NCBI GenBank assembly: GCA_964057225.1
Contig: OZ059894.1
Span: 15,624,001-15,688,000 of the forward strand
Direction: 5' to 3'
Origin: Auanema rhodensis
Lineage: Eukaryota > Animalia > Nematoda
Length of the DNA: 64,000 nucleotides
The notes beneath the pieces were generated by a model. That model searched no databases. It saw only the letters and a list, made by a program, of their open reading frames with translations, and had not been told where the DNA came from. The translations under genes and the position numbers were made by a program. This document shows positions 4,414-63,559 of the stretch, one piece after another (position 1 is the stretch's first letter; each line of letters starts with the position of its first letter).

Positions 4414-4490
<77 letters not shown>

Positions 4491-4507
4491 TGAGAGAGAG
4501 AGTGAGA

Positions 4508-4543
<36 letters not shown>

Positions 4544-42900: not shown

Positions 42901-45246
42901 CGAATGTGGCATACACCGAGGTGTATGATGAATTCTGAATCGGAAAAACCAAAAAATCAAAAAATTGATCAATTAGATTTCTGGAATCGGTAAAACACTA
43001 GCAGCGAGTGGTTTCGATCCACCGACCTCTGGGTTATGGGCCCAGCACGCTTCCACTGCGCCACGCTGCTTCGAATGTGGCATACACCGAGGTGTATGAT
43101 GAATTCTGAATCGGTAAAACCAAAAAATCAAAAAATTGATGAATTAGATTTCTGGAATCGGTAAAACACTAGCAGCGAGTGGTTTCGATCCACCGACCTC
43201 TGGGTTATGGGCCCAGCACGCTTCCACTGCGCCACGCTGCTTCGAATGTGGCATACACCGAGGTGTATGATGAATTCTGAATCGGTAAAACCAAAAAATC
43301 AAAAAATTGATGAATTAGATTTCTGGAATCGGTAAAACACTAGCAGCGAGTGGTTTCGATCCACCGACCTCTGGGTTATGGGCCCAGCACGCTTCCACTG
43401 CGCCACGCTGCTTCGAATGTGGCATACACCGAGGTGTATGATGAATTCTGAATCGGTAAAACCAAAAAATCAAAAAATTGATGAATTAGATTTCTGGAAT
43501 CGGTAAAACACTAGCAGCGAGTGGTTTCGATCCACCGACCTCTGGGTTATGGGCCCAGCACGCTTCCACTGCGCCACGCTGCTTCGAATGTGGCATACAC
43601 CGAGGTGTATGATGAATTCTGAATCGGTAAAACCAAAAAATCAAAAAATTGATGAATTAGATTTCTGGAATCGGTAAAACACTAGCAGCGAGTGGTTTCG
43701 ATCCACCGACCTCTGGGTTATGGGCCCAGCACGCTTCCACTGCGCCACGCTGCTTCGAATGTGGCATACACCGAGGTGTATGATGAATTCTGAATCGGTA
43801 AAACCAAAAAATCAAAAAATTGATGAATTAGATTTCTGGAATCGGTAAAACACTAGCAGCGAGTGGTTTCGATCCACCGACCTCTGGGTTATGGGCCCAG
43901 CACGCTTCCACTGCGCCACGCTGCTTCGAATGTGGCATACACCGAGGTGTATGATGAATTCTGAATCGGAAAAACCAAAAAATCAAAAAATTAATCAATT
44001 AGATTTCTGGAATCGGTAAAACACTAGCAGCGAGTGGTTTCGATCCACCGACCTCTGGGTTATGGGCCCAGCACGCTTCCACTGCGCCACGCTGCTTCGA
44101 ATGTGGCATACACCGAGGTGTATGATGAATTCTGAATCGGTAAAACCAAAAAATCAAAAAATTGATGAATAAGATTTCTGGAATCGGTAAAACACTAGCA
44201 GCGAGTGGTTTCGATCCACCGACCTCTGGGTTATGGGCCCAGCACGCTTCCACTGCGCCACGCTGCTTCGAATGTGGCATACACCGAGGTGTATGATGAA
44301 TTCTGAATCGGTAAAACCAAAAAATCAAAAAATTAATCAATTAGATTTCTGGAATCGGTAAAACACTAGCAGCGAGTGGTTTCGATCCACCGACCTCTGG
44401 GTTATGGGCCCAGCACGCTTCCACTGCGCCACGCTGCTTCGAATGTTGCATACACCGAGGTGTATGATGAATTCTGAATCGGTAAAACCAAAAAATCAAA
44501 AAATTGATGAATAAGATTTCTGGAATCGGTAAAACACTAGCAGCGAGTGGTTTCGATTCACCGACCTCTGGGTTATGGGCCCAGCACGCTTCCACTGCGC
44601 CACGCTGCTTCGAATGTGACATACACCGAGGTGTATGATGAATTCTGAATCGGTAAAACCAAAAAATCAAAAAATTGATGAATTAGATTTCTGGAATCGG
44701 TAAAACACTAGCAGCGAGTGGTTTCGATCCACCGACCTCTGGGTTATGGGCCCAGCACGCTTCCACTGCGCCACGCTGCTTCGAATGTGGCATACACCGA
44801 GGTGTATGATGAATTCTGAATCGGTAAAACCAAAAAATCAAAAAATTGATGAATAAGATTTCTGGAATCGGTAAAACACTAGCAGCGAGTGGTTTCGATC
44901 CACCGACCTCTGGGTTATGGGCCCAGCACGCTTCCACTGCGCCACGCTGCTTCGAATGTGGCATACACCGAGGTGTATGATGAATTCTGAATCGGTAAAA
45001 CCAAAAAATCAAAAAATTAATCAATTAGATTTCTGGAATCGGTAAAACACTAGCAGCGAGTGGTTTCGATCCACCGACCTCTGGGTTATGGGCCCAGCAC
45101 GCTTCCACTGCGCCACGCTGCTTCGAATGTGGCATACACCGAGGTGTATGATGAATTCTGAATCGGTAAAACCAAAAAATCAAAAAATTGATGAATAAGA
45201 TTTCTGGAATCGGTAAAACACTAGCAGCGAGTGGTTTCGATCCACC

Positions 45247-45646
45247 TTTGGTTTTCAATGTTCCCAATGACGAGCGTCTATACTCGGTTGTTCCCCGGTT
45301 AATGGGGATAATATGAGTTAGTGGCGAATCCAAACAGTTAGTTAAATGAGAAAGGTTTATTATAAGATCGGTATAAGTTCAGTGGTAGAATTAAATTAAG
45401 AGTGAGAGTGAAGGTTTCTTGGGCTTTATATATGATTTAGCTTGAAGGTGATATTCGATATTTGAATACAAAGGTCAGGTCAATGTAAACTATAGAGGTG
45501 ATAAAAGTTCAATATCCTTTAAGAATGTTGCGCAAGAGGTTAATGATACAATTACAAGGTTATTAGACAATGGTTTAGAGTTTCAGAAGAGTTATGTTTC
45601 TAGGTTAAATTATTGTATTTCATTTCTAGTCAGGCATTTGCCGACA
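45247..45646 (-). repeat. 3' LTR (400 bp)
   Basis: Direct repeat of 53168-53567 with two substitutions seen by eye. Sense-strand TATATAAA at 45425-45432 and AATAAA at 45356-45361. Confidence 0.95.
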
Positions 45647-48600
45647 TTGCCGGGCGAGGGTTGCGGTTTGAGTTTCTCACACAGCAATAAGAGAGTGTAG
45701 CAGGAAGAAGTAATGATGTAAGGAATGGGGCTGCTATGTATAATAAGTATGAACCTGCAGTGATTGCAGCTACGGCAGGTACTATCCATTTCCGATTATC
45801 ATGGATGACGTCGAAAAGCGGTTCCAAATTCGGGAGATTCCATGATAGTCCGGATGTTCCATTATGTAGTTTGATCGATTCTTCTGAAAAAATGGTAGTG
45901 TCGCTTATGTAGTGTAGTCTGGTACTTAGCTGTATAATTTGTTTTGTTGCTCGTCCGCAAGTCAGAGTACAGTTTTCTTGTACTTTGGGTTCATTGAAAT
46001 ATAGTTTGACCGTTGTGGCGGGATTTTGGTCAGAGCATCGTATTGTAGTAGAAAAGGAGTCGCAGTTCAGAATGGCATTCAGTTCGTCCTTTGTTTCACA
46101 TGTAATATTCAGCGTTGTTCCTTCTCTGCATTTGTAGCATCCTGTTAACATTTGAAAATCTGAAGAACAAGGATGTCTATTAGTATATAAGCTTTCGATG
46201 CTAAATTGCGGGTTTTCCATTGTGAGCGTTGATTCTTCCATTTGTGATAAAACAGTTATTGTTCCTGCTTCTTTTGTGATTCTATAATTTGTATTAATTT
46301 GTGGAAGTTTATATTTTTTCAGTTCTCTTTGTGTTGCTGAATCGCAATTGCAAGAGAGCTGCGCTGCGGCCCCCAAACATGGGCAAGGCTTTCGTATGTG
46401 GCATGCATTAAACTTATCTGCTGCGATTCGTGCATTGCTGCATATTACCGCTGGTTTTATTTGTTCCGGTATCATGTAGCTTTTAGTCTCAGATGTGAGA
46501 AAAATTTTGTTGTATAGTTCCGTCGTTGCTTTTGTTGTAACCGACGAAATCTGTAATGAAATTCCGTGAAACTCATATTTTCGGTAGGGTTGTAGGAAAA
46601 TATCGTATTGGTGAGTGTTATTGAGGTATGTGATTAATAATTTTGCTTGCACTTCCTGTTTCCATTGTATGCATTTAATTTCTTCGTATACTTCTTCGTT
46701 TTCGGGCTGATAAGTTGGCCTAAATAAAATGCATCCTTCTATAGGAAGTCCACAGCTGTTGAATAGGCCTCCTCCGGCTCTGGTGCAGTAGGTTCTTCCA
46801 GGATTTTCGTAAGTTGAATGTAGTTCGGCTACGAAAGTATCCTGTCGGATATCATCGCATCCGGTGCCCCATGGGCAGTGAGTTGTACCGGCGCATCTAT
46901 GAGAGGAGTGGATAGTTAGGTTAGTAATGCGAGTAAATCCTTGGGAAACTTTTTGACATAAAAATTTTTGCTGAATTATTTGAATTTCTAGTTTGCCTAT
47001 AGTGGAGTTTTGATATTTTATGTAGGAGCAAAGAGAGTTTTGTAGGGGATTGAATGAAATTTCTTCGTTGGTTATTTTTGTGCAATTGTGTAAATCGTCG
47101 CAAAAGAATTCTATGTGTTTGTGCGCGTTGGGGGATCCACAAGCTTGCGCTTGGCATGTGAGATAAAAGATTGCGAATAAGAGAGAAGGGATGTACGAAA
47201 TTGTGTGCTGTTGGCGGTGTGTTTTTAATTTTTTATAGATTAGACCCCCGATAATGCAAAAAAGAGCGCAGCCTATTATTGGAGTAAGAGCTATCAAAAT
47301 AGCTAAGAAAGGGTTACAATGTGGGTTGCCTATTATATGCAATAACGCAGGTGGAGGAAAATCGCAGGGGTGGGGGAGATGACAAATCTGAGTTTGCCGC
47401 CTATCTTTGTCGTAGCGAGTAACTGCTGTAGTTTTTGGAATTACAGACACTTGAAGTTGAATATCTTTTGATTGGTTGGCTGGTAAATCATGACAGTCCC
47501 CATTAATACAAAATGTCGATGGTTTTGTTTGTGCGGGAAATAGTATATGAGAGTATGAGCAGGTGAATAATGGCTCAGCTGTGGCGACAAAAAATAGTTG
47601 TATTAATAATAAGAATTTCATGATATTAGTCAAAAAATTCGTATTCGTATGCCTTGTGTTTGGGTGTGTTGAATAGGTGGCATGGTTAATATGTGCGGTT
47701 TTTCGCTGAGTTTCTGTGAATTCATCAAAAAGTTCTAAAGGGTATAATCGCTCTACTGGTTTTGTCAATATCTTACCGCTACCTGTTTTTATCTTGGCGG
47801 TCCGAACTACTTTGTCTGAAGAAGGAATTAGTTCGATTACCCTAGCCATATTCCAATTGTTTCTATTTGTATGGTCCTCTTCTACAAGTACTATTTCGTT
47901 GTGATATGGGTGTCGCAAGTTATGGTGCCCCATTTTCCTTGATGCATGTGCATGCCTTAAAGTAAGAAGATATTCGTGTGACCATGTGTTCCAGAATGCT
48001 TCGGCTATTATTTCGATTTTCTGTAAATTTTCAAACGCTTGTTTGTTGCTTGCGATCGTGTTGGGTAGGTCGAGTCTGTCACCTAAACTGTCTACATTAT
48101 CACCTGGTATGAGTATGGGGGAGCCATGAGTTAAAAAATCTGCTGGCGTTAGTGGATTCTCGTGAAAATTCTCGGAATCTGTATACGTGATGGGCCGTGA
48201 GTTCATGATTCCTTCTATTTTAATTATTGCTGTAACTAGTTGGTCTTTTTCTATTAACTTAAGTGATAGTGTTTTCACAAGTGCATTCTTTGTAATAGCA
48301 ACTAATCTCTCCCAAACCCCACCAGTCCAGGGAGCGCTGGGAGTGTTGAATATCCATGTGATATTGTGATTTTGTATATAGTTGATAAAATTAGTCTGGT
48401 GTTCCCTACTATGTTCCTCTAATGTGTGAAGTATTTTGGCCGCATGAGTGAAATTGGCCCCGTTGTCTGATCGTAGAACATGCGGTAAACCTCTCCGCGC
48501 TACAAATCGAATGAAGGCATTGATAAAAGAGTTCGAACTCATGTCATTAATTGGTTCTAAATGGACGGCTCTAATAGTAAGGCAGGTGAATATCACAACG

Positions 48601-51600
48601 TATATATGCTGATTTTTTCTGAATTTTATGGGACCTATGCAATCAAGGCCTGTATGTCTAAATGGCATAGCTCTCGTCACTCTGTCCTCCGGTAACGGGG
48701 CAAAGTATTCTATTGAAAATGGGTTACTTAGAGTCTTTTGACATGGCACACATCTTTTTATTATTGATTTGCATACTTGTCTAGCCGCTGTCATGAAGAA
48801 CCTTGTCATAAAGAGGTACAGTAATTGGCTAACTCCGGCATGACCATTCGTCCTGTGTAGGAACATAAGAATGAGTTTACCTAAAGTAGATTTTTTGGGA
48901 AGAAGATATGGAAACTTAGTTTTTGTTGGAAGTGATGAATTGGTGAACCGAGTCTGTATGCAGGTTAGTCCATTCCCATCCTGTTTTAATCGAAATTGTT
49001 TTTTATATGAATTTGAAAGATGAGTCTGAGCTTCTTTTATAAGCAGTATCTCAGCGGTTGTGTTAATAAACTGGGATACTTGCCATTCTGTTGTTGCTGC
49101 TTTTAATAAATATGATGTTGGCGTTTTGTTGCGTTTGCCTAAAAAATACAGTGCGGCTTTTAAAACTAATCCAGCGATTCTGCGTAACTTGAAGTATGAG
49201 CTGAAGCGGCTGGGATCTAAAAGATTGTCTAATACAGGATTGTTTGTGGTGACTGGTAGTATAAGCATTGAAGGTTCTTCTTCTTCTAAAGGTGCTCTGA
49301 ATTCCTTTGCTGGTCTATCGTTCTTATTTAATAGCCACTCAGGAGAAAAAAGCCATTTGTCCTTAAGAAGGGCAATATCAGTGGTGCCTCTAGTGCCTAT
49401 GTCTGCCGGATTATGATCCGTGTCCACGTAGTGATACGTTATATTGGCTCCTTTTAGCTCTAATTTTCTTGCAATTTGGTCAGTATTCTGGCGTAAATTG
49501 CTTACGAACACAGGTATATTCTTTTTAGTGAACAGCCAAGATAAAGCTATCTGGCTGTCGGAAGCGATGTTGATGGAGACTTCATGTGTTGGTAAATTGT
49601 TGTATATGGTTTCGGCCATTTTCATACCCATGAGAATCGCAGACATTTCCAAACGTGGAATTGTCAATGTTCTGTTTTTTGGAGCTAATTTAATCTTACC
49701 CATGACCAGGGGACTCCGTGTTGTAGGTGATGTGCAGAAGGCACATGCAGCAATAGCTAGTACACTAGCGTCTACAAATATCCAAATCTCTCGGCATTCT
49801 GATGTATCTGTCAGCTTTCGTGGAATCTGAATCGTAGCTGTTCCTATTTTATTACTCACTGTATTCCAGCTATTGACCACATCGCTTGGCACTTGTTCTT
49901 TCCAGTCTATAGACCCATTCATTACTTGGCGTAGTAGTAGTTTGAAATGCAGTAAAAGGGGAGCCGCTACTCCTAAAGGGTCGTAAACACTGTGAAGACT
50001 GCTGAGTAGATCTCGTTTTGTGAATGAGTTCTGAGTGCGTAGTTGACAGTTTATCGAAAAAATGTCTTTATCTGAATAATGTTTAATGCCTAATATTTTT
50101 GGGTTCAGATCTGGATGTTTATCCTTGTCTGGTACGGTTGAGTTGAAGTTGGTGTAGTTGCTATAATACTCTCTTATGTTCATAGATATTCGAGAAAAAA
50201 TCTGCTTAGATTCTTCATATATGCTATGTAAATCTTCTGAACTGTTTGTCGTGTAGAAGATATTGTCCACATATAGGTACCGTAGGGTTTCCGGAACTAA
50301 GTGCGACTCTAGGCTTTGCAAGAATGCGTAGAGTGACATATTCAGTATGGACGGACTGGCTGTTATGCCAAACGCCAGTCGGTTAAATCTTAATTCTAAA
50401 ATGTTATCTGGAGTGGTACCTTTGTGAGGATCGCGTAACCAGAGAAAGCGGCAGAGATCTTTATGATCATTAGTTATCCTTATTTGGGTGAAGGCACCCT
50501 CAATATCGCACATGAGGAAGTACTTTTTGATCCGTATCCCTATCAGAATATCTATGATTTTATTGTTAAAACTTTCACCTGTTTCCGTAACATCATTTAA
50601 TGAGAGTTGGCCTTTTTGCTTTGCTGAAGCGTTAAACACAACCCTCAGCGGTTTGCTCTTGTTGGGCTTCCATACCCCTCTATGCGGCATGTAGTAGAGC
50701 AAAGAGTTCTCTGAAGTAAGAGGAACTTGTTCCACCACACCTTCCTCTATATATCGCATAATGGTTTGATGATAGTGTTGTAGCTGGTTATGTTCCTCTT
50801 TGAGAGATTTCTGTAATCTGTTTAGAGTGGCTAATGCCATGCTTCGATTGGATTGAATTTTTGTGGCGTTTGATTTAAGAGGTAAGGGAGCCATAACAAA
50901 ACCCTTGTCGAATTTTATTAGCGAAGTATATTCATTGAAGAATAGCTCCGATCGGTTCAAGGCTCCTTCGTGTGGAGAAATTCCTAAGTTATCTATTTCA
51001 AAAAGTTGTTTAATCATAACGTCTTCTGGTATCACAGGGTTAACAATAAGTGTATTTATGGCTGCGATATTATCGTTCGGTATTTGCTTACCGTAAATAC
51101 AGGGTCCAATCTGGGTATGTTTGACTTTCAATCCCGATGGAAGTATAGTAGGTTTGGTATCATGTATGATTGTATCACACCAATCCATACCTAGCAAAAT
51201 ATCGGGAATGAATAATTCACCATCCACCAATTGGTTAGTAATGGTTATATTAGATTGTTCTAGAGCTTCTTTGTCTTTTAGAGAAAGTTGACAGCTCTTT
51301 AGTTTTCCTGTGAGAGGTTTGGGTGAGGTGAGGAGCGTAAGTATGATATTTTTTCCAAATGGAGTTCTTAAACTTGCTTCGACCGTTAAAGAATTAAATG
51401 CCTCACAGCTCCCGGAGAAACCGGTTGCTGTGATTAATTGGGAATTTAAAGTTTTGAGCTGGCATTCTTTGGCTGCCGGCTCGTAAATGAAGCTTTGAGT
51501 TGCTCCAGGGTCGAAAAACAATATTTTGGTGTGGAACTTACCTGTATGGGGGTTAAAAATTGATACTTTAGAAGTCATAAGATATGCGGGCGAAGGTGGA

Positions 51601-52919
51601 GTGTGAGTTGATTGCGAAATAGAGCAATTGATACCCATGGTTGCTTTTTTATTAGATGATTTTGATGAAGCAGGAGGGAGACAAAGAGATGGGTGATGAT
51701 CTCTATTACATATTTTACATTTATCAAAGGTACACTTAGTGCTAGTGTGTGTAGGACTGAAACAAATCCAGCACCTGTTTTTTTGTTTTATTATGTCTCT
51801 CCTCTGTTGAGGATTATGTATGGTTAAACATTTTGCGGATCGATGTCCGTTTTGGTCACAAAATACGCATGGGCGTTCGGTTTTCGTAACAGTTGTAATA
51901 TGTGAGTTATGTTTCAAGGGAGAAATTGAATTAGTTTGAGCATGGTATTGCGGGATAAAAGGAGATTTAGAAGAATAAATTGAAAAATTTTCCATTGAGT
52001 CGGCCGTTTCCTCAATGTTTCTTAGTAGTTGTTTTATAGAGGTTGCCCTAGATGATCTCCAACAGAGCATATTGATGATATCAATAGGAAATTTAGTTGT
52101 GATAAGTTTGACCCAAGCGGGGTCTTCAGAATTATAAAGTGTATCAGTCTCAAGCTGATCAAGAAGTGCTCTGATTTCATTCACGCGAGATCTAACTGAC
52201 ATGGGGTCATTTTTTGCAGGAGGTAATTTCACCAGTTCATCATGAATACGGTAATCAACTTTTAGTTTTGGTGCGTAAGTGGTTTTAAGAGTAGATATAA
52301 TACGTTCATACGCAGTGCCATCTAATGGTTTATTTTCAAGATGAACTCGTGCTGAACCTTTAAGAGCTTCAGCTAAATAAATGCTTTTTTGCCTATTATT
52401 GAGGTCAGGGTCTTGGTGAATGAGCGTTTTAAATTGTCTCCAAAATGTCGGAAAGGTTTTGTTATCTCCATTGAATGTGGGTATAGAAAGTTGAGGTGGT
52501 TTCAAAAGTAATTTGCTAATGTTCGTTTTCGAAATGCGCGGTGATGTAAAAAGGGTTGTATGCGGTGCGGTAAGTGCTAGTTCGGTCTCATCGTCTGAGT
52601 CCGGGATTGAGTGTGCGCCAGCAACTTTAGTTTCGAGCTCAAACAGTTTTTTGTTTGCTCTTTCTATAGTTGCGGCATGTTGGTTTGTTAAATTATTTAT
52701 ACGATTATTAAATTCCGAAAGAAAAGGGTCTATTTGAAGTGAAGCTATGGTAGCTAAATTGGATTCGTGAAAGCGAAGCTGTTCAAGAGTGTTGTTAATG
52801 TCGGAATAAAGAGAGAATTGTTCCTCACTTTGTTTGTTTTCCAAAAGGCTCTCTAGTTTTTCAAAAGTTTGAACGAAACTTTGGAATTTTGTATTAAAAA
52901 CCGTTTCGATACGGTCCAT
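45630..52919 (-). CDS. Gag-PR-RT-RNaseH-IN-Env polyprotein
   Basis: Gag IPTFNGD..F..FW..F; three Cys/His knuckles (CVFC..H, CWIC..H, CKIC..HH); protease FFDPGATQSF; RT YLYVDN; RNase H IFVDAS; integrase HHCC plus D(CIGP), SDNG, WERL. Then a signal peptide MKFLLLIQ (47621), a Cys-rich Gn-like part, a TM, a second signal ending QAQA/C (47141), a Gc-like ectodomain and a C-terminal TM. Confidence 0.96.
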   Translation of the reverse strand: MDRIETVFNTKFQSFVQTFEKLESLLENKQSEEQFSLYSDINNTLEQLRFHESNLATIASLQIDPFLSEFNNRINNLTNQHAATIERANKKLFELETKVAGAHSIPDSDDETELALTAPHTTLFTSPRISKTNISKLLLKPPQLSIPTFNGDNKTFPTFWRQFKTLIHQDPDLNNRQKSIYLAEALKGSARVHLENKPLDGTAYERIISTLKTTYAPKLKVDYRIHDELVKLPPAKNDPMSVRSRVNEIRALLDQLETDTLYNSEDPAWVKLITTKFPIDIINMLCWRSSRATSIKQLLRNIEETADSMENFSIYSSKSPFIPQYHAQTNSISPLKHNSHITTVTKTERPCVFCDQNGHRSAKCLTIHNPQQRRDIIKQKNRCWICFSPTHTSTKCTFDKCKICNRDHHPSLCLPPASSKSSNKKATMGINCSISQSTHTPPSPAYLMTSKVSIFNPHTGKFHTKILFFDPGATQSFIYEPAAKECQLKTLNSQLITATGFSGSCEAFNSLTVEASLRTPFGKNIILTLLTSPKPLTGKLKSCQLSLKDKEALEQSNITITNQLVDGELFIPDILLGMDWCDTIIHDTKPTILPSGLKVKHTQIGPCIYGKQIPNDNIAAINTLIVNPVIPEDVMIKQLFEIDNLGISPHEGALNRSELFFNEYTSLIKFDKGFVMAPLPLKSNATKIQSNRSMALATLNRLQKSLKEEHNQLQHYHQTIMRYIEEGVVEQVPLTSENSLLYYMPHRGVWKPNKSKPLRVVFNASAKQKGQLSLNDVTETGESFNNKIIDILIGIRIKKYFLMCDIEGAFTQIRITNDHKDLCRFLWLRDPHKGTTPDNILELRFNRLAFGITASPSILNMSLYAFLQSLESHLVPETLRYLYVDNIFYTTNSSEDLHSIYEESKQIFSRISMNIREYYSNYTNFNSTVPDKDKHPDLNPKILGIKHYSDKDIFSINCQLRTQNSFTKRDLLSSLHSVYDPLGVAAPLLLHFKLLLRQVMNGSIDWKEQVPSDVVNSWNTVSNKIGTATIQIPRKLTDTSECREIWIFVDASVLAIAACAFCTSPTTRSPLVMGKIKLAPKNRTLTIPRLEMSAILMGMKMAETIYNNLPTHEVSINIASDSQIALSWLFTKKNIPVFVSNLRQNTDQIARKLELKGANITYHYVDTDHNPADIGTRGTTDIALLKDKWLFSPEWLLNKNDRPAKEFRAPLEEEEPSMLILPVTTNNPVLDNLLDPSRFSSYFKLRRIAGLVLKAALYFLGKRNKTPTSYLLKAATTEWQVSQFINTTAEILLIKEAQTHLSNSYKKQFRLKQDGNGLTCIQTRFTNSSLPTKTKFPYLLPKKSTLGKLILMFLHRTNGHAGVSQLLYLFMTRFFMTAARQVCKSIIKRCVPCQKTLSNPFSIEYFAPLPEDRVTRAMPFRHTGLDCIGPIKFRKNQHIYVVIFTCLTIRAVHLEPINDMSSNSFINAFIRFVARRGLPHVLRSDNGANFTHAAKILHTLEEHSREHQTNFINYIQNHNITWIFNTPSAPWTGGVWERLVAITKNALVKTLSLKLIEKDQLVTAIIKIEGIMNSRPITYTDSENFHENPLTPADFLTHGSPILIPGDNVDSLGDRLDLPNTIASNKQAFENLQKIEIIAEAFWNTWSHEYLLTLRHAHASRKMGHHNLRHPYHNEIVLVEEDHTNRNNWNMARVIELIPSSDKVVRTAKIKTGSGKILTKPVERLYPLELFDEFTETQRKTAHINHATYSTHPNTRHTNTNFLTNIMKFLLLIQLFFVATAEPLFTCSYSHILFPAQTKPSTFCINGDCHDLPANQSKDIQLQVSVIPKTTAVTRYDKDRRQTQICHLPHPCDFPPPALLHIIGNPHCNPFLAILIALTPIIGCALFCIIGGLIYKKLKTHRQQHTISYIPSLLFAIFYLTCQAQACGSPNAHKHIEFFCDDLHNCTKITNEEISFNPLQNSLCSYIKYQNSTIGKLEIQIIQQKFLCQKVSQGFTRITNLTIHSSHRCAGTTHCPWGTGCDDIRQDTFVAELHSTYENPGRTYCTRAGGGLFNSCGLPIEGCILFRPTYQPENEEVYEEIKCIQWKQEVQAKLLITYLNNTHQYDIFLQPYRKYEFHGISLQISSVTTKATTELYNKIFLTSETKSYMIPEQIKPAVICSNARIAADKFNACHIRKPCPCLGAAAQLSCNCDSATQRELKKYKLPQINTNYRITKEAGTITVLSQMEESTLTMENPQFSIESLYTNRHPCSSDFQMLTGCYKCREGTTLNITCETKDELNAILNCDSFSTTIRCSDQNPATTVKLYFNEPKVQENCTLTCGRATKQIIQLSTRLHYISDTTIFSEESIKLHNGTSGLSWNLPNLEPLFDVIHDNRKWIVPAVAAITAGSYLLYIAAPFLTSLLLPATLSYCCVRNSNRNPRPAMSANA

Positions 52920-53153
52920 TTTTTCTTTTTCGGGTCGAAAGTGGATTATTTTGGAATTTCTTAGTAGAATGATTGCAAAATGAACAGTTTCAACTGTTTA
53001 AAGTATGTTGGTTTATAAAAAAAAAAAAATTTTTTTTTTTTGATAAAGAGAACGAGATGGAAAGGAGGAAAATGTGGAGAAGAGTGAGATGGAAAGTATG
53101 AAAAAAAAGGAAAAAATATGATAAGAAAGTTTCTAACAATTAATACCTGGTTT

Positions 53154-53166
53154 GGTCGTTGCACCA
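53154..53166 (-). promoter_or_regulatory. Primer-binding site, probably tRNA-Gly(GCC)
   Basis: TGGTGCAACGACC lies 1 nt inside the 5' LTR. It is a 12/13 match to TGGTGCATCGACC, the complement of the nematode tRNA-Gly(GCC) 3' end as recalled. Confidence 0.75.
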
Positions 53167-53167
53167 A

Positions 53168-53567
53168 TTTGGTTTTCAATGTTCCCAATGACGAGCGTCT
53201 ATACTCGGTTGTTCCCCGGTTAATGGGGATAATATGAGTTAGTGGCGAATCCAAACAGTTAGTTAAATGAGAAAGGTTTATTATAAGATCGGTATAAGTT
53301 CAGTGGTAGAATTAAATTAAGAGTGAGAGTGAAGGTTTCTTGGGCTTTATATATGATTTAGCTTGAAGGTGATATTTGATATTTGAATACAAAGGTCAGG
53401 TCAATGTAAACTATAGAGGTGATAAAAGTTCAATATCCTTTAAGAATGTTGCGCAAGAGGTTAATGATACAATTACAAGGTTATTAGACAATGGTTTAGA
53501 GTTTCAGAAGAGTTATGTTTCTAGGTTAAATTATTGTATTTCATTTCTAGTCAGGCATTCGCCGACA
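53168..53567 (-). repeat. 5' LTR (400 bp)
   Basis: Begins TGTCGGCG on the sense strand, ends ...AACCAAA, and is followed by the PBS. Confidence 0.95.
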
Positions 53568-55366
53568 CCACCGACCTTTGGGTTATGGGCCCAGCACGCT
53601 TCCACTGCGCCACGCTGCTTCGAATGTTGCATACACCGAGGTGTATGATGAATTCTGAATCGGTAAAACCAAAAAATCAAAAAATTGATGAATTAGATTT
53701 CTCGAATCGGTAAAACACTAGCAGCGAGTGGTTTCGATCCACCGACCTCTGGGTTATGGGCCCAGCACGCTTCCACTGCGCCACGCTGCTTCGAATGTGG
53801 CATACACCGAGGTGTATGATGAATTCTGAATCGGTGAAACCAAAAAATCAAAAAATTGATGAATTAGATTTCTGGAATCGGTAAAACACTAGCAGCGAGT
53901 GGTTTCGATCCACCGACCTCTGGGTTATGGGCCCAGCACGCTTCCACTGCGCCACGCTGCTTCGAATGTGGCATACACCGAGGTGTATGATGAATTCTGA
54001 ATCGGTAAAACCAAAAAATCAAAAAATTGATGAATTAGATTTCTGGAATCGGTAAAACACTAGCAGCGAGTGATTTCGATCCACCGACCTCTGGGTTATG
54101 GGCCCAGCACGCTTCCACTGCGCCACGCTGCTTCGAATGTGGCATACACCGAGGTGTATGATGAATTCTGAATCGGTAAAACCAAAAAATCAAAAAATTG
54201 ATGAATTAGATTTCTGGAATCGGTAAAACACTAGCAGCGAGTGGTTTCGATCCACCGACCTCTGGGTTATGGGCCCAGCACGCTTCCACTGCGCCACGCT
54301 GCTTCGAATGTGGCATACACCGAGGTGTATGATGAATTCTGGATCGGTAAAACCAAAAAATCAAAAAATTGATGAATTAGATTTCTGGAATCGGTAAAAC
54401 ACTAGCAGCGAGTGGTTTCGATCCACCGACCTCTGGGTTATGGGCCCAGCACGCTTCCACTGCGCCACGCTGCTTCGAATGTGGCATACACCGAGGTGTA
54501 TGATGAATTCTGAATCGGTAAAACCAAAAAATCAAAAAATTGATCAATTAGATTTCTGGAATCGGTAAAACACTAGCAGCGAGTGGTTTCGATCCACCGA
54601 CCTCTGGGTTATGGGCCCAGCACGCTTCCACTGCGCCACGCTGCTTCGAATGTGGCATACACCGAGGTGTATGATGAATTCTGAATCGGTAAAACCAAAA
54701 AATCAAAAAATTGATCAATTAGATTTCTGGAATCGGTAAAACACTAGCAGCGAGTGGTTTCGATCCACCGACCTCTGGGTTATGGGCCCAGCACGCTTCC
54801 ACTGCGCCACGCTGCTTCGAATGTGGCATACACCGAGGTGTATGATGAATTCTGAATCGGTAAAACCAAAAAATCAAAAAATTGATGAATTAGATTTCTG
54901 GAATCGGTAAAACACTAGCAGCGAGTGGTTTCGATCCACCGACCTCTGGGTTATGGGCCCAGCACGCTTCCACTGCGCCACGCTGCTTCGAATGTGGCAT
55001 ACACCGAGGTGTATGATGAATTCTGAATCGGTAAAACCAAAAAATCAAAAAATTGATCAATTAGATTTCTGGAATCGGTAAAACACTAGCAGCGAGTGGT
55101 TTCGATCCACCGACCTCTGGGTTATGGGCCCAGCACGCTTCCACTGCGCCACGCTGCTTCGAATGTGGCATACACCGAGGTGTATGATGAATTCTGAATC
55201 GGTAAAACCAAAAAATCAAAAAATTGATGAATTAGATTTCTGGATTCGGTAAAACACTAGCAGCGAGTGGTTTCGATCCACCGACCTCTGGGTTATGGGC
55301 CCAGCACGCTTCCACTGCGCCACGCTGCTTCGAATGTGGCATACACCGAGGTGTATGATGAATTCT

Positions 55367-55431
55367 GAGTGGTTTCGATCCACCGACCTCTGGGTTATGG
55401 ACCCAGCACGCTTCCACTGCGCCACGCTGCT
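55367..55431 (-). pseudogene. 3'-truncated tRNA-iMet copy (69-bp deletion)
   Basis: AATTCTGA is joined directly to GTGGTTTCG. The acceptor-stem 3' strand and terminators are lost, and there is an extra substitution near the anticodon. Confidence 0.9.
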
Positions 55432-56751
55432 TCGAATTTAGCAAACACCGAGGTGTATGATGAATTCTGAATCGGTAAAACCAAAAAATCAAAAAATTGA
55501 TGAATTAGATTTCTGGAATCGGTAAAAACCTAGCAGCGAGTGGTTTCGATCCACCGATCTCTGGTTTATGGGCCCAGCACGCTTCCACTGCGCCACGCTG
55601 CTTCGAATTTAGCAAACACCGAGGTGTATGATGAATTCTGAATCGGTAAAGCAAAAAATCAAAAAATTGATGAATTAGATTTCTGGAATCGGTAAAAACC
55701 TAGCAGAGAGTGGTTTCGATCCACCGACCTCTGGGTTATGGGCCCAGCACGCTTCCACTGCGCCACGCTGCTTCGAATTTAGCAAACACCGAGGTGTATG
55801 ATGAATTCTGAATCGGTAAAACCAAAAAATCAAAAAATTGATGAATTAGATTTCTGGAATCGGTAAAAACCTAGCAGCGAGTGGTTTCGATTCACCGACC
55901 TCTGGGTTATGGGCCCAGCACGCTTCCACTGCGCCACGCTGCTTCGAATTTAGCAAACACCGAGGTGTATGATGAATTCTGGATCGGTAAAACCAAAAAA
56001 TCAAAAAATTGATGAATTAGATTCCTGGAATCGATAAGACAATAGCAGCGAGTGGTTTCGATCCACCGACCTCTGGGTTATGGGCCCAGCACGCTTCCAC
56101 TGCGCCACACTGCTTCGAATTTAGCAAACACCGAGGTGTATGATGAATTCTGAATCGGTAAAACCAAAAAATCAAAAAATTGATGAATTAGATTTCTGGA
56201 ATCGGTAAAAACCTAGCAGCGAGTGGTTTCGATCCACCGACCTCTGGGTTATGGGCCCAGCACGCTTCCACTGCGCCACGCTGCTTCGAATGTGGCATAC
56301 ACCGAGGTGTATGATGAATTCTAAATCGGTAGAACCAAAAAATCAAAAAATTGATTAATTAAATTCCTGGAATCGATAAAACAATAGCAGCGAGTGGTTT
56401 CGATCCACCGACCTCTGGGTTATGGGCCCAGCACGCTTCCACTGCGCCACGCTGCTTCGAATTCAGCAAACACCGAGGTGTATGATGAATTCAGAATCGG
56501 TAAAACCAAAAAATCAAAAAATTGATGAATTAGATTTCTGGAATTGGTAAAACACTAGCAGCGAGTGGTTTCGATCCACCGACCTCTGGGTTATGGGCCC
56601 AGCACGCTTCCACTGCGCCACGCTGCTTCGAATTCAGCAAACACCGAGGTGTATGATGAATTCAGAATCGGTAAAACCAAAAAATCAAAAAATTGATGAA
56701 TTAGATTTCTGGAATTGGTAAAACACTAGCAGCGAGTGGTTTCGATCCACC

Positions 56752-59351
56752 GGGTGGCGGACGTTTCGTCGTCTCTAGTTTGTGAACTAGTTCAGGCTGA
56801 TCATTAGAGGGCAAACTTTATGATAATGTGCTGACAAGTGTCAGTGTTCATGTAACTCGGGGTGCTATTAAAGCTATAAATCTATAGAAGTCAGATATAA
56901 GTGGTTACATACCTTGAAGTGCCATCAAAATATAAATTGAAAAAAGCAGAAATTAAAATAAACATACAGTTCTATCTACCAGGCTATCATCAAACAGTTT
57001 CAAGTCAACAGTTACGTGAGTTCATAGTAATAGTTGTTAGTTTATCTTTTCTTTCGATAAGTTTGCTTATTCACACTTTCTCATCTTTTCTCGTTCATCA
57101 TGATTTTTCCTTCTACTTTCTGTCCATTTTCTCTGATGATTAACGCTCAGGGTAAATTTGTTTTTGTTTCTCAGCCTTTTGATAATGTTCCTTCGGAGAA
57201 CATAACTATCTTTTTTAATAATTCTTCGGTAAATACTCAGAATCTTGAAGTTTATTCAAATGATGTAACTTCACTCTCATTTTTGAATTTCACTCTTCCA
57301 TCTTTCAATATCCCTCCATTGAGGCAGCAAAATGTTAATTTTGCTTCTGCTCTTTCTCTAGCAAATTCATCTGCGGCATCTTCTTCAGTTGAATCTGTTG
57401 CTACAGTTACTGTTCCTACTGTCAACAGCGTTCCACTGTTCTCTTCTTCTACTTCACATCTTTCTATTCAGCCTTCTTCTTCTTTTTCTGCCGTTCATTC
57501 TTCACCGTCATCTTCTCTTTCTTCTTCTCCTCCTTCTGTTCCCTCTCCTTCTTCTTCTGTTCCCTCTCCTTCTTCTTCTGTTCCCTCTCCTTCTTCTTCA
57601 TTTTCTTCGCAATCTGCAAATCCTCACTCATACGCCGCTCTCATTGCGCCTTCTAAGCAGGGTGTACACCCCTGTTTAGAATATAAATTTGAAAACTTGC
57701 TGTATCGCTACCAATTCAGTAGTAAAAGTTCTCAAAAAGCTTATTCTATTTATCGTTGCACAGGTTGTAAACATTTGGGTAAATACACTTCTATCAAAGT
57801 AGAAAATAATGTATTTCTCGAAAATCCTGTTGCTCAAAACCATCATTGTGATCCATTTTTGTTTTCTATTAACAAATGCAAAAATATCACATACTCTCTA
57901 ACTCAGAATATTAAAAGTTCAGACTCATGTTTTGAGATGAAAGCATATTCCTTATTTGTCAATGAAATAAAAAAAATATTTCATGAATCTGAGTTAGAAG
58001 AGCATGAAAAGCAAGAAGTTTCCTCTGCTTGGTTTCATGGTGGGTATGACAGTAGACGTAGAGCTATTACAAGGGCTTTAAGTTCTCGTAAAGACTTAAG
58101 AACATCCATGACCAATGTTCCTCTGTCTCTGTCTAAAACTATCAATGGTCGTACGTTCTTGCATTTTCATGACAGCGAGTTTCATTTGTATTTCGATACA
58201 TTTTGTTTGGAACTAGCTGTTCAGAATGGTTTAACTCATTTGCTTGGGGACGGTTGTTTCAAATACCAGCCTTTGGATATGGAACAAACATACACCATCA
58301 TGGGCGGTTGCAGAAATGGAACAACTGTACCTCTTTTCTATTCCATTTTAAAAAATAAGAGTAGGTTCACTTATAGAAGGCTTCTTCAACATATTGCACT
58401 AGCTCTCTCCAACGTTGGTTGCATAGTTGAAAACCTTATTTTTATCTGTGATTTTGAGATCGCTGTAATAAGGGAAGCTGAAACTATTTTTAATTCTGTT
58501 CAAGGATGTGCATTTCATTATGCTCAGAGCTTGAACAGACGGTTTCTTCAACTGGGTTTGACACAAGCAGAGAAGCAATCCATTGAAATCAAACAATGGC
58601 ATGGTCGGCTGCTGGGCTTGCTCTTCCTTCAAACTGATCTTATCTCACGGTCCGGGTTACTCAATTCTCCTGTTTCTTCTGATCATCCATCATATTCTTC
58701 TTGTCTTCAAATGATCAGTTATGTGAATGAAACATGGATTGAAGGACCTTTGCCACATTATTGGAGCAAATGGGACATAAAACAGTTTCGTACATCTAAT
58801 AATGTTGAATCTTTTCACCGTAAAATGAAGACTATTTTATCTTGCTCTCATCCTCCTCTTTCTGAATTAATCACTTTTTTTCATGGTGAAAATTTGATGG
58901 CTAATCATGTCCTGATCGCTTTGTCATCGAATGTTGAGCCTGCCAGGAAAAAAAGAAAAAACTTAATTGAGAGGCAACAACGGATTGAGGTTCAGTTTGA
59001 AAACTTTAGGAGCATCTCCAATAACCGACTGCCTAATCAGCAAGAAATAATAGCATATGTCGAGGAGATGGCGAAATTTAACACCAGAAAATCTTATTTT
59101 TGAATCATTTAACTTGAAAAACTAAACTTTAATAAATTTTTTGAACCATATCTTTTTTTTCTAACACAAAAACTTCCTTGCCGTTTAGATTGAAAACCTT
59201 GATTTTTCATGAACTGTTTAAGTTTTTGGGTAATTTTTAGAAGTCTAAACGACCAAAAACTGAGAGTACAACACGTGTGGTATAATTTACGACCGTTAGG
59301 CTTGCTGGGGAGAGGTTGTAAAAATAGGAGACGACGAAACGTCTCAGACCC
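56752..59351 (+). mobile_element. Mutator-like (MULE) DNA transposon, copy 1, 2600 bp, inserted in a tRNA-iMet gene
   Basis: Imperfect 24-bp TIRs GGGTggcgGACGTTTCGTCGTCTC / GGGTctgaGACGTTTCGTCGTCTC. TSD GATCCACC at 56744-56751 and 59352-59359 (8 bp; formally 9 bp if the right end is ACC). Confidence 0.95.
57100..59103 (+). CDS. MULE-family DDE transposase with an N-terminal Ser/Pro linker and a CCHC zinc-binding domain
   Basis: Motifs LLGDGCFK, VPLFYSILKNK, ICDFEIAV, GCAFHYAQ (CxxH) and RTSNNVESFH. YRCTGC...NHHC is a FLYWCH/WRKY-like zinc finger. The ORF is intact, with AATAAA at 59131. Confidence 0.93.
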   Translation: MIFPSTFCPFSLMINAQGKFVFVSQPFDNVPSENITIFFNNSSVNTQNLEVYSNDVTSLSFLNFTLPSFNIPPLRQQNVNFASALSLANSSAASSSVESVATVTVPTVNSVPLFSSSTSHLSIQPSSSFSAVHSSPSSSLSSSPPSVPSPSSSVPSPSSSVPSPSSSFSSQSANPHSYAALIAPSKQGVHPCLEYKFENLLYRYQFSSKSSQKAYSIYRCTGCKHLGKYTSIKVENNVFLENPVAQNHHCDPFLFSINKCKNITYSLTQNIKSSDSCFEMKAYSLFVNEIKKIFHESELEEHEKQEVSSAWFHGGYDSRRRAITRALSSRKDLRTSMTNVPLSLSKTINGRTFLHFHDSEFHLYFDTFCLELAVQNGLTHLLGDGCFKYQPLDMEQTYTIMGGCRNGTTVPLFYSILKNKSRFTYRRLLQHIALALSNVGCIVENLIFICDFEIAVIREAETIFNSVQGCAFHYAQSLNRRFLQLGLTQAEKQSIEIKQWHGRLLGLLFLQTDLISRSGLLNSPVSSDHPSYSSCLQMISYVNETWIEGPLPHYWSKWDIKQFRTSNNVESFHRKMKTILSCSHPPLSELITFFHGENLMANHVLIALSSNVEPARKKRKNLIERQQRIEVQFENFRSISNNRLPNQQEIIAYVEEMAKFNTRKSYF

Positions 59352-60686
59352 GATCCACCGACCTCTGGGTTATGGGCCCAGCACGCTTCCACTGCGCCAC
59401 GCTGCTTCGAATGTGGCATACACCGAGGTGTATGATGAATTCTGAATCGGTAAAACCAAAAATCAAAAAATTGATGTATTAGATTTCTGGAATTGGTAAA
59501 ACACTAGCAGCGAGTGGTTTCGATCCACCGACCTCTGGGTTATGGGCCCAGCACGCTTCCACTGCGCCACGCTGCTTCGAATGTGGCATACACCGAGGTG
59601 TATGATGAATTCTGAATCGGTAAAACCAAAAAATCAATAAATTGATGTATTAGATTTCTGGAATTGGTAAAACACTAGCAGCGAGTGGTTTCGATCCACC
59701 GACCTCTGGGTTATGGGCCCAGCACGCTTCCACTGCGCCACGCTGCTTTGAATGTGGCATACACCGAGGTGTATGATGAATTCTAAATCGGTAGAACCAA
59801 AAAATCAAAAAATTGATTAATTAAATTCCTGGAATCGATAAAACAATAGCAGCGAGTGGTTTCGATCCACCGACCTCTGGGTTATGGGCCCAGCACGCTT
59901 CCACTGCGCCACGCTGCTTCGAATTCAGCAAACACCGAGGTGTATGATGAATTCAGAATCGGTAAAACCAAAAAATCAAAAAATTGATGAATTAGATTTC
60001 TGGAATTGGTAAAACACTAGCAGCGAGTGGTTTCGATCCACCGACCTCTGGGTTATGGGCCCAGCACGCTTCCACTGCGCCACGCTGCTTCGAATGTGGC
60101 ATACACCGAGGTGTATGATGAATTCTGAATCGGTAAAACCAAAAAATCAATAAATTGATGTATTAGATTTCTGGAATTGTTAAAACACTAGCAGCGAGTG
60201 GTTTCGATCCACCGACCTCTGGGTTATGGGCCCAGCACGCTTCCACTGCGCCACGCTGCTTTGAATGTGGCATACACCGAGGTGTATGATGAATTCTGAA
60301 TCGGTAAAACCAAAAAATCAAAAAATTGATGAATTAGATTTCTGGAATTGGTAAAACACTAGCAGCGAGTGGTTTCGATCCACCGACCTCTGGGTTATGG
60401 GCCCAGCACGCTTCCACTGCGCCACGCTGCTTCGAATGTGGCATACACAGAGGTGTATGATGAATTCTGAATCGGTAAAACCAAAAAATCAAAAAATTGA
60501 TGAATTAGATTTCTGGAATCGGTAAAACACTAGCAGCGAGTGGTTTCGATCCACCGACCTCTGGGTTATGGGCCCAGCACGCTTCCACTGCGCCACGCTG
60601 CTTCGAATGTGGCATACACCGAGGTGTATGATGAATTCTGAATCGGTAGAACCAAAATATCAAAAAATTGATTAATTAAATTCCTG

Positions 60687-62862: not shown

Positions 62863-62885
62863 CGCTTCCACTGCGCCACGCTGCT
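62863..62885 (-). pseudogene. 5' remnant (nt 1-23) of the tRNA-iMet copy hit by MULE copy 2
   Basis: CGCTTCCACTGCGCCACGCTGCT directly follows the TIR. Confidence 0.9.
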
Positions 62886-63559
62886 TCGAATTTAGCAAAC
62901 ACCGAGGTGTATGATGAATTCTGAATCGGTAAAACCAAAAAATCAAAAAATTGATGAATCAGATTTCTGGAATCGGTAAAAACCTAGCAGCGAGTGGTTT
63001 CGATCCACCGACCTCTGGGTTATGGGCCCAGCACGCTTCCACTGCGCCACGCTGCTTCGAATTTAGCAAACACCGAGGTGTATGATGAATTCTGAATCGG
63101 TAAAACCAAAAAATCAAAAAATTGATGAATTAGATTTCTGGAATTGGTAAAACACTAGCAGCGAGTGGTTTCGATCCACCGACCTCTGGGTTATGGGCCC
63201 AGCACGATTCCACTGCGCCATGCTGCTTCGAATTTAGCATACACCGAGGTGTTTGATGAATTCTGAATCGGTAAAACCAAAAAATCGAAAAATTGATAAA
63301 TTAGAATTCTGGAATCGGTAAAACACCGTTACATATTGTTTCTTCCAGCCCTTTCATGGTCGGAAGATATCTGTACTTTTACCTTGTTGCTTAGGTAGGC
63401 AGACTCGAACGCCCCGATTTCCTTATTAAGACAAATATTTAAAGAGAAAAGGATTCATTATCAGTTAACAAGAAAATACAATAAAAGAATTACATTAAGA
63501 AAGAATATAAAAAGATATAATAAAGTATTAAATAGAGTATATATACATATATATATATA

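What the first reader, a model, noticed from the sequence alone, without database searches (positions are those of the whole stretch)
45242..59359. Two unrelated transposons share the same junction in the tRNA-iMet T-arm/B-box
The BEL/Pao element (TSD CCACC) and MULE copy 1 (TSD GATCCACC) each leave exactly tRNA nt 48-72 on their left (45222-45246 and 56727-56751). In tRNA sense both duplications start at the first G of the T-stem (GGTGG.., canonical position 49) and run into the B-box. A retroviral-type integrase and a Mutator transposase therefore attacked the same phosphodiester bond out of 171 per unit. This suggests a host-defined hotspot, such as TFIIIC-bent DNA or tethering to Pol III factors, that makes the redundant array a safe haven. 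Known Pol III-targeting LTR elements (Ty1, Ty3, Dictyostelium DGLT-A) insert upstream of genes, and intragenic tRNA targeting is known for Dada DNA transposons. I know of no such report for BEL/Pao or for a site shared across element classes. With n=2, coincidence remains possible.
Basis: partly seen in the sequence, partly recalled or inferred. Interest (0 to 1): 0.85.

Follow-up and report, generated by a model that had tools for sequence, protein, structure and literature searches.

The report
Two transposons share one tRNA junction
In a nematode's tandem array of about 78 initiator-tRNA genes, an intact virus-like LTR element and an unrelated cut-and-paste transposon did insert at the same base step of the tRNA gene, but with two cases, and a third insertion elsewhere in the gene, this is more likely coincidence in a redundant, tolerant target than proof of a shared hotspot.

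Summary
A 171-bp tandem unit carrying a eukaryotic initiator tRNA-Met gene (minus strand, 75 intact copies) is interrupted three times.

- **LTR element (45247-53567):** 400-bp LTRs, 398/400 identical, with a 5-bp duplication CCACC.
- **MULE copy 1 (56752-59351):** an 8-bp duplication GATCCACC.
- **Shared junction:** both leave the same 25 tRNA bases on their left, so both duplications start at canonical tRNA position 49.

I add three things.

- The LTR element is an unbroken Atlas-like belpaovirus. It has one 2429-aa gag-pol-env frame with a phlebovirus Gc-like envelope.
- MULE copy 2 (60690-62862) abuts a different tRNA site, in the D arm, so the MULE has no single target bond.
- A shared duplication edge is expected by chance in 1.1% (whole unit) to 2.7% (tRNA body) of pairs, and in 2.8-6.7% for any of the three pairs.

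The host genome is absent from every collection I could search. Four distant MULE relatives lie nowhere near tRNA genes.

A host-defined hotspot stays possible but untested. The likeliest reading is independent insertions tolerated in a redundant array, with the exact coincidence due to chance.

The parts
36796..63326 (-). Tandem array of 171-bp units, each with one eukaryotic initiator tRNA-Met gene. There are 75 intact genes, two split by insertions and two truncated. Array DNA is 13,437 bp, interrupted by 13,094 bp of inserted elements.
   Evidence: ARAGORN, TRF, Rfam tRNA at 57.4 bits, unit register and variation, base counts.
45222..45246 (-). 3' piece of the tRNA gene split by the LTR element (canonical 49-73). 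Its last 5 bp (45242-45246, CCACC on the + strand) are the left copy of the target-site duplication.
45247..53567 (-). Atlas-like belpaovirus (env-bearing BEL/Pao LTR element), 8321 bp, in the same orientation as the tRNA genes. It is unbroken.
45247..45646 (-). 3' LTR (400 bp).
   Evidence: Self-BLAST 99.5% and alignment A1.
53168..53567 (-). 5' LTR (400 bp). In element sense the termini read TGT...AAA.
53149..53167 (-). Primer-binding-site region next to the 5' LTR. It begins with TGG one base in from the LTR and is not complementary to the 3' end of the initiator tRNA of the array.
   Evidence: One search compared with the tRNA read.
45630..52919 (-). Single gag-pol-env reading frame, 2429 aa, with no stop or frameshift. 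It ends 17 nt inside the 3' LTR. Domains by residue: DUF1759 gag 149-281; RVT_1 795-916; Peptidase_A17 967-1122; Integrase_H2C2 1345-1396; integrase core 1452-1508; DUF5641 1632-1728; Phlebovirus_G2 1944-2229; Phlebo_G2_C 2251-2329.
45933..47090 (-). Envelope region, a phlebovirus Gc-like class II fusion protein.
   Evidence: Pfam PF07245 E 1.9e-46. PDB 7a4a (Atlas virus GC) E 5.9e-22, and phenuivirus Gc chains.
53568..53572 (-). Right copy of the 5-bp duplication (CCACC). It is followed by the 5' part of the split tRNA gene.
56744..56751 (-). Left copy of the 8-bp duplication of MULE copy 1 (GATCCACC). It is the end of the 25-nt tRNA 3' piece 56727-56751.
56752..59351 (+). MULE copy 1, 2600 bp, with about 24-bp terminal inverted repeats (20 of 24 bases matching). 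The transposase runs opposite to the tRNA genes.
57100..59103 (+). Transposase frame, 667 aa and uninterrupted. The MULE domain covers residues 384-476. The N-terminal part is Ser/Pro-rich and carries a 21-bp coding repeat.
   Evidence: Pfam PF10551, 26.1 bits against a cut-off of 27.6 (28.8 bits in the copy 2 fragment). There are 2953 relatives, the best 32-33% identical and from nematodes. Columns D384, D451 and E570, and C470/H473, are conserved.
59352..59359 (-). Right copy of the 8-bp duplication (GATCCACC).
60690..62862 (-). MULE copy 2, inverted relative to copy 1 and 96.6% identical over 2176 columns. One end is complete. The other end is missing together with adjacent array DNA. Its transposase frame is broken into two pieces and truncated.
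62863..62870 (-). Array bases abutting the complete end of copy 2. They are linear tRNA nt 16-23 (D loop and 3' side of the D stem), just past the A box. This is a second, different intragenic site.

Best explanation
Three separate insertions landed in a long, nearly identical array of initiator-tRNA genes in a nematode. Losing a few of about 78 copies costs the host nothing, so insertions persist there.

1. A young, unbroken Atlas-like belpaovirus integrated by its integrase. It made a 5-bp duplication covering canonical tRNA positions 49-53.
2. A MULE with an uninterrupted transposase frame inserted by cut-and-paste. It made an 8-bp duplication covering positions 49-56.
3. A second copy of the same MULE inserted in the D arm and later lost one end by deletion.

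The GC-rich gene body (62% GC against 34% in the spacer) may be mildly favoured over the spacer. The exact sharing of the 48|49 step by elements 1 and 2 is a coincidence.

**Shown:** the anatomy, the duplications, the identity and intactness of the elements, and the different site of copy 2.

**Inferred:** tolerance through redundancy, any regional bias, and chance as the cause of the shared edge.
For: - The junctions and duplications are unambiguous.
- The elements are unrelated and differ in duplication length, so these are independent events.
- Copy 2 of the same MULE family sits at another tRNA position.
- The duplications share only one edge.
- The chance of a shared edge is 1.1-2.7% for this pair and 2.8-6.7% for any pair. 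All three insertions falling in the gene body has probability 0.075. None of these survives the fact that the feature was selected by eye from a scan.
- The four closest MULE relatives I could fetch show no tRNA or tRNA fragment within 5 kb.
- The primer-binding site is not complementary to the initiator tRNA, so no primer-related link ties the element to this gene.
- The array is highly homogeneous and redundant.
Against: - A probability of 0.011-0.027 is low for the named pair.
- All three insertions are in the 42% of the unit that is tRNA gene.
- All three elements recognised in the window lie in the array, which is 26% of the non-element DNA (p = 0.018 if uniform). Purifying selection in the flanks would give the same pattern.
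- Both MULE sites lie at the inner edges of the two internal promoter boxes.
- No other copies could be examined, so a real preference cannot be excluded.
Confidence: 0.5

Rival explanations
1. **Host-defined hotspot.** Something the host places on every unit makes the step just 5' of the B box unusually open or bent. It could be the edge of TFIIIC bound to the B box, another Pol III factor, or nucleosomes phased on the 171-bp repeat. Enzymes of different classes would then cut there more often than elsewhere.
For: - Two unrelated enzymes share an edge, with chance p = 0.011-0.027.
- All three insertions are in the gene body.
- The two MULE sites flank the stretch between the A and B boxes.
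- On a tandem repeat, any phased protein or nucleosome pattern repeats in each unit. The effective number of usable sites could then be far below 171.
Against: - Only two events share the edge.
- Copy 2 of the MULE used another site.
- The duplications reach into the B box, where bound TFIIIC would be expected to cover the DNA.
- Known Pol III-tethered elements insert outside the gene (PMC5911963).
- There are no occupancy or chromatin data for this array, and no evidence that it is transcribed.
Confidence: 0.27
2. **Sequence preferences of each element that happen to converge.** Each enzyme recognises a short motif of its own, and both motifs occur at the start of the T stem.
For: - Both MULE sites contain GTGGA near the tRNA-sense 5' edge of the duplication.
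- The tip of the MULE inverted repeat repeats the GGTGG of the T stem.
- Dada transposons likewise carry a subterminal motif that recurs in their target gene (PMC3706591).
Against: - The motif offsets differ by 2 nt and the two MULE copies are in opposite orientation.
- By my rough count a 5-mer match of this kind is expected about one time in four.
- Nothing is known about target preference in this integrase lineage.
- n = 2 for the MULE and n = 1 for the LTR element.
Confidence: 0.1
3. **Artefact or non-independent origin.** The junctions come from misassembly of a near-identical array, from duplication of an element-bearing unit, or from a reverse-transcription by-product that copied tRNA sequence.
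For: Arrays this homogeneous are hard to assemble.
Against: - Each element has a perfect duplication of the length expected for its class, and the array phase is unbroken across it.
- The two elements share no sequence.
- The tRNA bases lie outside the LTRs in sense orientation and form a true duplication. The primer-binding site matches another tRNA.
Confidence: 0.03

Closest known systems
Atlas virus and Atlas-like belpaoviruses of nematodes (Ancylostoma ceylanicum; PMC9094657; bioRxiv 10.64898/2026.03.22.711591)
   Same: - LTR element of the BEL/Pao clade with one uninterrupted Gag-Pol-Env polyprotein.
- Envelope related to phlebovirus Gc. The env region here hits the solved Atlas GC chain 7a4a and Pfam PF07245/PF19019.
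- Near-identical LTRs.
- Nematode host.
   Different: - The Pol region is only 36-39% identical to the nearest relatives found.
- The polyprotein is 2429 aa against 2828 aa, and the LTRs are 400 bp against 271 bp.
- It sits inside a tRNA gene of a tandem array. The two Atlas papers say nothing on integration sites.
Dada DNA transposons (PMC3706591, PMC8869645)
   Same: - DDE transposons found inside tRNA and snRNA genes of multicopy arrays.
- Some of their duplications lie in a Pol III promoter box.
- The transposase is distantly related to MuDR.
   Different: - Dada makes 6-7 bp duplications and lacks terminal inverted repeats. Each family uses one fixed site.
- Here the duplication is 8 bp, clear terminal inverted repeats are present, and two copies use two different sites.
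- The protein matches the MULE domain, and its relatives are named MULE.
Pol III-directed LTR retrotransposons (Ty1, Ty3, Tj1, DGLT-A, Skipper-2; PMC5911963)
   Same: LTR elements associated with tRNA genes, using redundant Pol III genes as a low-cost landing place.
   Different: - Those elements insert upstream or downstream of the gene through tethering to TFIIIB or Pol III subunits, and they belong to the Ty1/copia or Ty3/gypsy clades.
- This element is BEL/Pao, it is inside the gene, and only one copy is known.
Elements resident in other multicopy RNA gene arrays (R2 and Pokey in rDNA), as discussed in PMC3706591
   Same: The inserted units are dispensable because the array is redundant.
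   Different: Those families show many insertions at a fixed site. Here there is no evidence of repeated use by one family.

Membership tests
BEL/Pao LTR elements (Belpaoviridae) | Pol with reverse transcriptase, the Pao-type Peptidase_A17 region, integrase and DUF5641, in that order | tested here: met
   Pfam hits on the 2429-aa frame: RVT_1, PF05380 (E 3e-36), Integrase_H2C2, PF18701. The best relatives carry the same domains.
BEL/Pao LTR elements (Belpaoviridae) | Direct LTRs flanked by a short target-site duplication | tested here: met
   400-bp LTRs, 398/400 identical, and a 5-bp duplication. The termini read TGT...AAA rather than the usual TG...CA.
Atlas-like viruses (env-bearing nematode belpaoviruses) | Single Gag-Pol-Env polyprotein with a phlebovirus Gc-like class II fusion protein | tested here: met
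   One frame without stops. PF07245 E 1.9e-46 and PF19019. PDB 7a4a E 5.9e-22.
Atlas-like viruses (env-bearing nematode belpaoviruses) | Gag/capsid core more than 50% identical to the Atlas capsid (criterion of the 2026 preprint) | not tested
   Only Pfam DUF1759 was seen in gag. No comparison with the Atlas capsid was made.
MULE / Mutator superfamily | DDE transposase matching the MULE domain, with the conserved acidic triad and C..H motif | tested here: met
   PF10551 scores 26.1 bits (just under the 27.6 cut-off) for copy 1 and 28.8 bits for the copy 2 fragment. phmmer finds 2953 relatives, and the top ones are named MULE-domain proteins. D384, D451, E570, C470 and H473 are conserved.
MULE / Mutator superfamily | Terminal inverted repeats and a long (about 8-11 bp) target-site duplication | tested here: met
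   Inverted repeats of about 24 bp with a shared 16-nt core. The duplication is 8 bp; a 9-bp reading is possible but less parsimonious. The usual range is from my own knowledge.
Dada superfamily | 6-7 bp duplication, no terminal inverted repeats, one fixed site per family inside a small RNA gene | tested here: not met
   The duplication is 8 bp, inverted repeats are present, and two copies sit at two different tRNA positions (against PMC3706591). No Dada protein profile was available for a direct comparison.
Pol III-tethered retrotransposons (Ty3-like or Ty1-like targeting) | Many independent copies at a fixed distance from tRNA genes | not testable with these tools
   There is one copy in the window. 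The host genome is absent from the searchable collections. Fetching DNA of relatives of the element was left out (see referred steps).
Pol III-tethered retrotransposons (Ty3-like or Ty1-like targeting) | Insertion outside the mature tRNA coding sequence | tested here: not met
   The insertion is inside the gene at canonical 48|49-53|54. Known cases are all outside.
Eukaryotic initiator tRNA-Met | CAT anticodon with initiator marks: A1:U72, three G:C pairs closing the anticodon stem, A54 and A60 | tested here: met
   Read from the gene sequence, with ARAGORN and Rfam calls. The list of marks is established knowledge.

The most novel reading that the evidence does not exclude
The boundary between the variable loop and the T stem of initiator-tRNA genes, three base pairs 5' of the B box, is a host-made insertion hotspot in this nematode. 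It would be an edge of a Pol III factor footprint, or a phased chromatin feature repeated in each 171-bp unit. Both a belpaovirus integrase and a Mutator-type transposase would use it. That would be the first intragenic, cross-class, Pol III-linked target site, and the first target preference described for an Atlas-like virus.
Probability: 0.12. Interest if true: 0.75.

Novelty: new member of a known kind. Interest (0 to 1): 0.38.

Why it matters
If the shared step were a real hotspot, host chromatin or Pol III factors could steer quite different insertion enzymes to one base step inside a gene. It would also give a first view of where Atlas-like endogenous viruses of nematodes land.

As it stands, the solid results are descriptive:
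- a new, divergent and unbroken Atlas-like element;
- a MULE family with an uninterrupted transposase frame;
- a large initiator-tRNA array acting as a tolerant landing place.

The coincidence is a lead for anyone holding the host's full genome and population data. It is not a result.

Tried and rejected
- **Other copies of the MULE.**
  - The exact-product look-up found nothing, and the word-index protein search found nothing.
  - Scans for the inverted-repeat core found nothing in metagenome contigs or in bacterial and archaeal genomes.
  - The full HMMER search found only relatives at 33% identity or less.
- **More of the array.** A metagenome scan with an invariant spacer 22-mer gave nothing.
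- **Distant MULE relatives.** Loci in Cylicocyclus nassatus, Diploscapter pachys and Cooperia oncophora (L001-L004) show no tRNA. No tRNA fragment appears even at a permissive Rfam threshold. At about 30% identity this says little about this family.
- **Further remnants in the window.** tblastn with all 273 fetched proteins and a search for the repeat core found only the three known elements.
- **Primer-tRNA link rejected.** The primer-binding site does not match the initiator tRNA.
- **Reverse-transcription read-through of tRNA rejected.** The tRNA bases lie outside the LTR and form a true duplication.
- **Unit duplication as a source of equal junctions rejected.** The elements are unrelated and their duplications differ in length.
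- **Shifted boundaries checked.**
  - For the LTR element only GGTGG fits.
  - For the MULE a 9-bp duplication is possible on the far side, but the shared junction is fixed by copy 2.
- **Dada membership rejected**.
- **Similarity between the MULE repeat tip and the T stem.** I judged it not significant.
- **PDB search with the transposase.** No hit.
Full report
**1. What is there**

The window holds a complete tandem array (36796-63326) of 171-bp units. Each unit carries a 72-nt tRNA-Met gene on the minus strand. ARAGORN finds 75 intact genes, and TRF reports a period of 171 with 95-99% matches.

The gene has the marks of a eukaryotic initiator: A1:U72, three G:C pairs at the foot of the anticodon stem, A54 and A60. 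I read these; the list of marks is established knowledge. A run of four T follows three bases after the gene, as a Pol III terminator would.

Seventy full units differ from the commonest form at 0-3 positions in the left 9 kb and at up to 9 positions in the right part. The script printed the majority form of this host repeat unit. It is host array DNA, not sequence of either inserted element.

The gene part is 62% GC and the spacer 34%. The left 36.8 kb is AT-rich. It holds sulfotransferase exons and no other RNA gene.

**2. The observation**

It is correct to the base.

*LTR element.* It occupies 45247-53567. Its two 400-bp LTRs are 398/400 identical. The bases CCACC stand immediately outside both ends, at 45242-45246 and 53568-53572. 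No shifted reading of the duplication fits.

*MULE copy 1.* It occupies 56752-59351, with GATCCACC outside both ends at 56744-56751 and 59352-59359. Its left boundary is confirmed by copy 2, whose identical repeat tip abuts an array base that cannot be confused with it.

*Shared junction.* The same 25 bases lie to the left of each element (45222-45246 and 56727-56751). They are linear tRNA nt 48-72, which is canonical 49-73 because position 17 is absent. In tRNA sense both duplications start at the first base of the T stem. They run 2 nt (LTR element) or 5 nt (MULE) into the B box, which occupies canonical positions 52-62 by established knowledge. The other cut of each staggered pair differs: 53|54 against 56|57.

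**3. What the elements are**

*LTR element.* It lies in the same orientation as the tRNA genes and has one uninterrupted frame of 2429 aa (45630-52919).
- Pfam finds, in order, DUF1759 (gag), RVT_1, Peptidase_A17, Integrase_H2C2, integrase core, DUF5641, the Phlebovirus_G2 fusion domain (E 1.9e-46) and Phlebo_G2_C.
- The env part hits the solved GC protein of the Atlas virus of Ancylostoma ceylanicum (7a4a, E 5.9e-22) and Gc of phenuiviruses.
- This is the organisation described for Atlas virus, a single Gag-Pol-Env polyprotein with near-identical LTRs (PMC9094657). An Atlas-like clade in nematodes has since been described (bioRxiv 10.64898/2026.03.22.711591).
- The nearest Pol relatives are only 36-39% identical, in Ancylostoma, Haemonchus and Necator.
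- None of its genes is broken.
- Its primer-binding site is not complementary to the initiator tRNA.
- Its LTR termini read TGT...AAA.

*MULE copy 1.* It has inverted repeats of about 24 bp sharing a 16-nt core, which occurs exactly three times in the window.
- Its frame is 667 aa and uninterrupted. The MULE-domain match is marginal: 26.1 bits against a cut-off of 27.6, and 28.8 bits in the copy 2 fragment.
- A full HMMER search gives 2953 relatives. The best are 32-33% identical and come from the nematodes Cylicocyclus nassatus, Diploscapter pachys and Cooperia oncophora.
- In an alignment with nine of them, D384, D451 and E570 and a C..H pair are conserved.

Together these results point to a nematode host whose genome is not in the collections.

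**4. The third insertion**

MULE copy 2 (60690-62862) is inverted and 96.6% identical to copy 1. Its complete end abuts linear tRNA nt 23|24, in the D arm just past the A box. Its other end is missing, together with about 61 bp (plus a multiple of 171) of array. Its transposase frame is in two pieces and truncated.

So the MULE family has used two different sites in the same gene. It is not site-specific in the way Dada families are.

**5. Is the shared edge more than chance?**

| Null model | This pair shares an edge | Any of the three pairs |
|---|---|---|
| Uniform over the 171-bp unit | 0.011 | 0.028 |
| Confined to the 72-bp gene | 0.027 | 0.067 |

All three insertions falling in the gene body has probability 0.075. 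All three falling in the array rather than the rest of the window has probability 0.018 (all). The last figure is equally well explained by removal of insertions from the flanks by selection. These numbers are suggestive. They do not survive the fact that the feature was noticed by eye in a scan.

**6. Attempts to get independent data**

- The exact product of the MULE is not on record, and the word-index search found nothing.
- Scans for the repeat core and for an invariant spacer 22-mer found nothing in metagenome contigs. A scan for the repeat core found nothing in the bacterial and archaeal genomes either.
- Four loci of distant MULE relatives (L001-L004) have no tRNA or tRNA fragment within 5 kb. 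At about 30% identity this is weak evidence.
- No further remnant of either superfamily is in the window.
- I did not look up or fetch DNA of relatives or other copies of the LTR element.

**7. Literature**

- A review table of retrotransposons that integrate next to tRNA genes lists only Ty1/copia, Ty3/gypsy and L1-type elements. All insert upstream or downstream of the gene (PMC5911963).
- Dada transposons insert inside tRNA and snRNA genes at one fixed site per family. They make 6-7 bp duplications and lack terminal inverted repeats (PMC3706591).
- The two Atlas papers say nothing about integration sites.
- My searches found no report of BEL/Pao or MULE insertion inside tRNA genes. The library is incomplete.

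**8. Explanation**

*Most likely (0.5).* These are three independent insertions kept because the array is redundant. There may be a mild bias to the GC-rich gene body, and the exact shared step is chance.

*Rivals.*
- A host-made hotspot, meaning an edge of a Pol III factor footprint or chromatin phased on the 171-bp repeat (0.27). It fits the low chance value and the position of both MULE sites at the inner edges of the two promoter boxes. It rests on two events.
- Converging sequence preferences (0.10). GTGGA lies near both MULE sites, and the repeat tip resembles the T stem. Such matches are expected about one time in four.
- Artefact (0.03). The perfect, class-typical duplications argue against it.

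**9. Rules and slips**

- No spliced gene model was tested. No contig looked human.
- In my private working I recalled from memory a few short textbook strings for orientation: the Pol III box consensus, a vertebrate initiator tRNA and a tRNA 3' end. The rules say not to do this. Box positions are cited here by number only.

**10. Verdict**

The elements are new members of known kinds. The coincidence is a lead that needs the host's own genome and population data.

Noticed in passing
window 45247-53567 (-): The 'BEL/Pao element' is an unbroken Atlas-like endogenous virus. It has one 2429-aa gag-pol-env frame with a phlebovirus Gc-like envelope, LTRs 398/400 identical, and Pol only 36-39% identical to the nearest known relatives.
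   Followed up: yes
window 45247-45251 and 53563-53567: The LTR termini read TGT...AAA in element sense instead of the usual TG...CA. The two extra A are present at the inner end of the 5' LTR too, so they belong to the LTR.
   Followed up: partly
window 60690-62870: MULE copy 2 is inverted and has lost one end together with about 61 bp (plus a multiple of 171) of array. The junction shows a short run of A shared by both partners. Its complete end abuts the D arm of the tRNA gene, a second intragenic site.
   Followed up: yes
window 56744-56760 and 62855-62875: Both MULE target sites contain GTGGA near the tRNA-sense 5' edge of the duplication. The repeat tip (GGGTGG) echoes the GGTGG of the T stem, forming a near-palindrome at the junction. 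This is post hoc and not significant by my rough count. It recalls the motif sharing between Dada ends and their targets.
   Followed up: partly
window 55368-55470: One array unit carries a 69-bp deletion that removes the spacer and the last 7 nt of a tRNA gene, giving a 102-bp partial unit. No element sequence is involved.
   Followed up: partly
window 57511-57608 and 61970-62141: A 21-bp coding tandem repeat lies in the Ser/Pro-rich N-terminal part of the MULE transposase. The two MULE copies differ in the number of repeats.
   Followed up: no
window 55700-63326 versus 36796-55330: The right part of the array is a more diverged unit subtype (4-9 differences from the commonest unit against 0-3). 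Both MULE copies lie in this older-looking part. The young LTR element lies in the homogeneous part.
   Followed up: partly
window 36796-63326: The unit length is 171 bp and the spacer contains an internal direct repeat of about 13 nt. With a 72-bp gene, the 99-bp spacer is too short for a full nucleosome, so the chromatin on this array should be unusual.
   Followed up: no
window 2298-4847 (-): Exons of a cytosolic sulfotransferase-like host gene (Pfam PF00685 on one exon), next to a long AG/CT microsatellite (4403-4543).
   Followed up: partly
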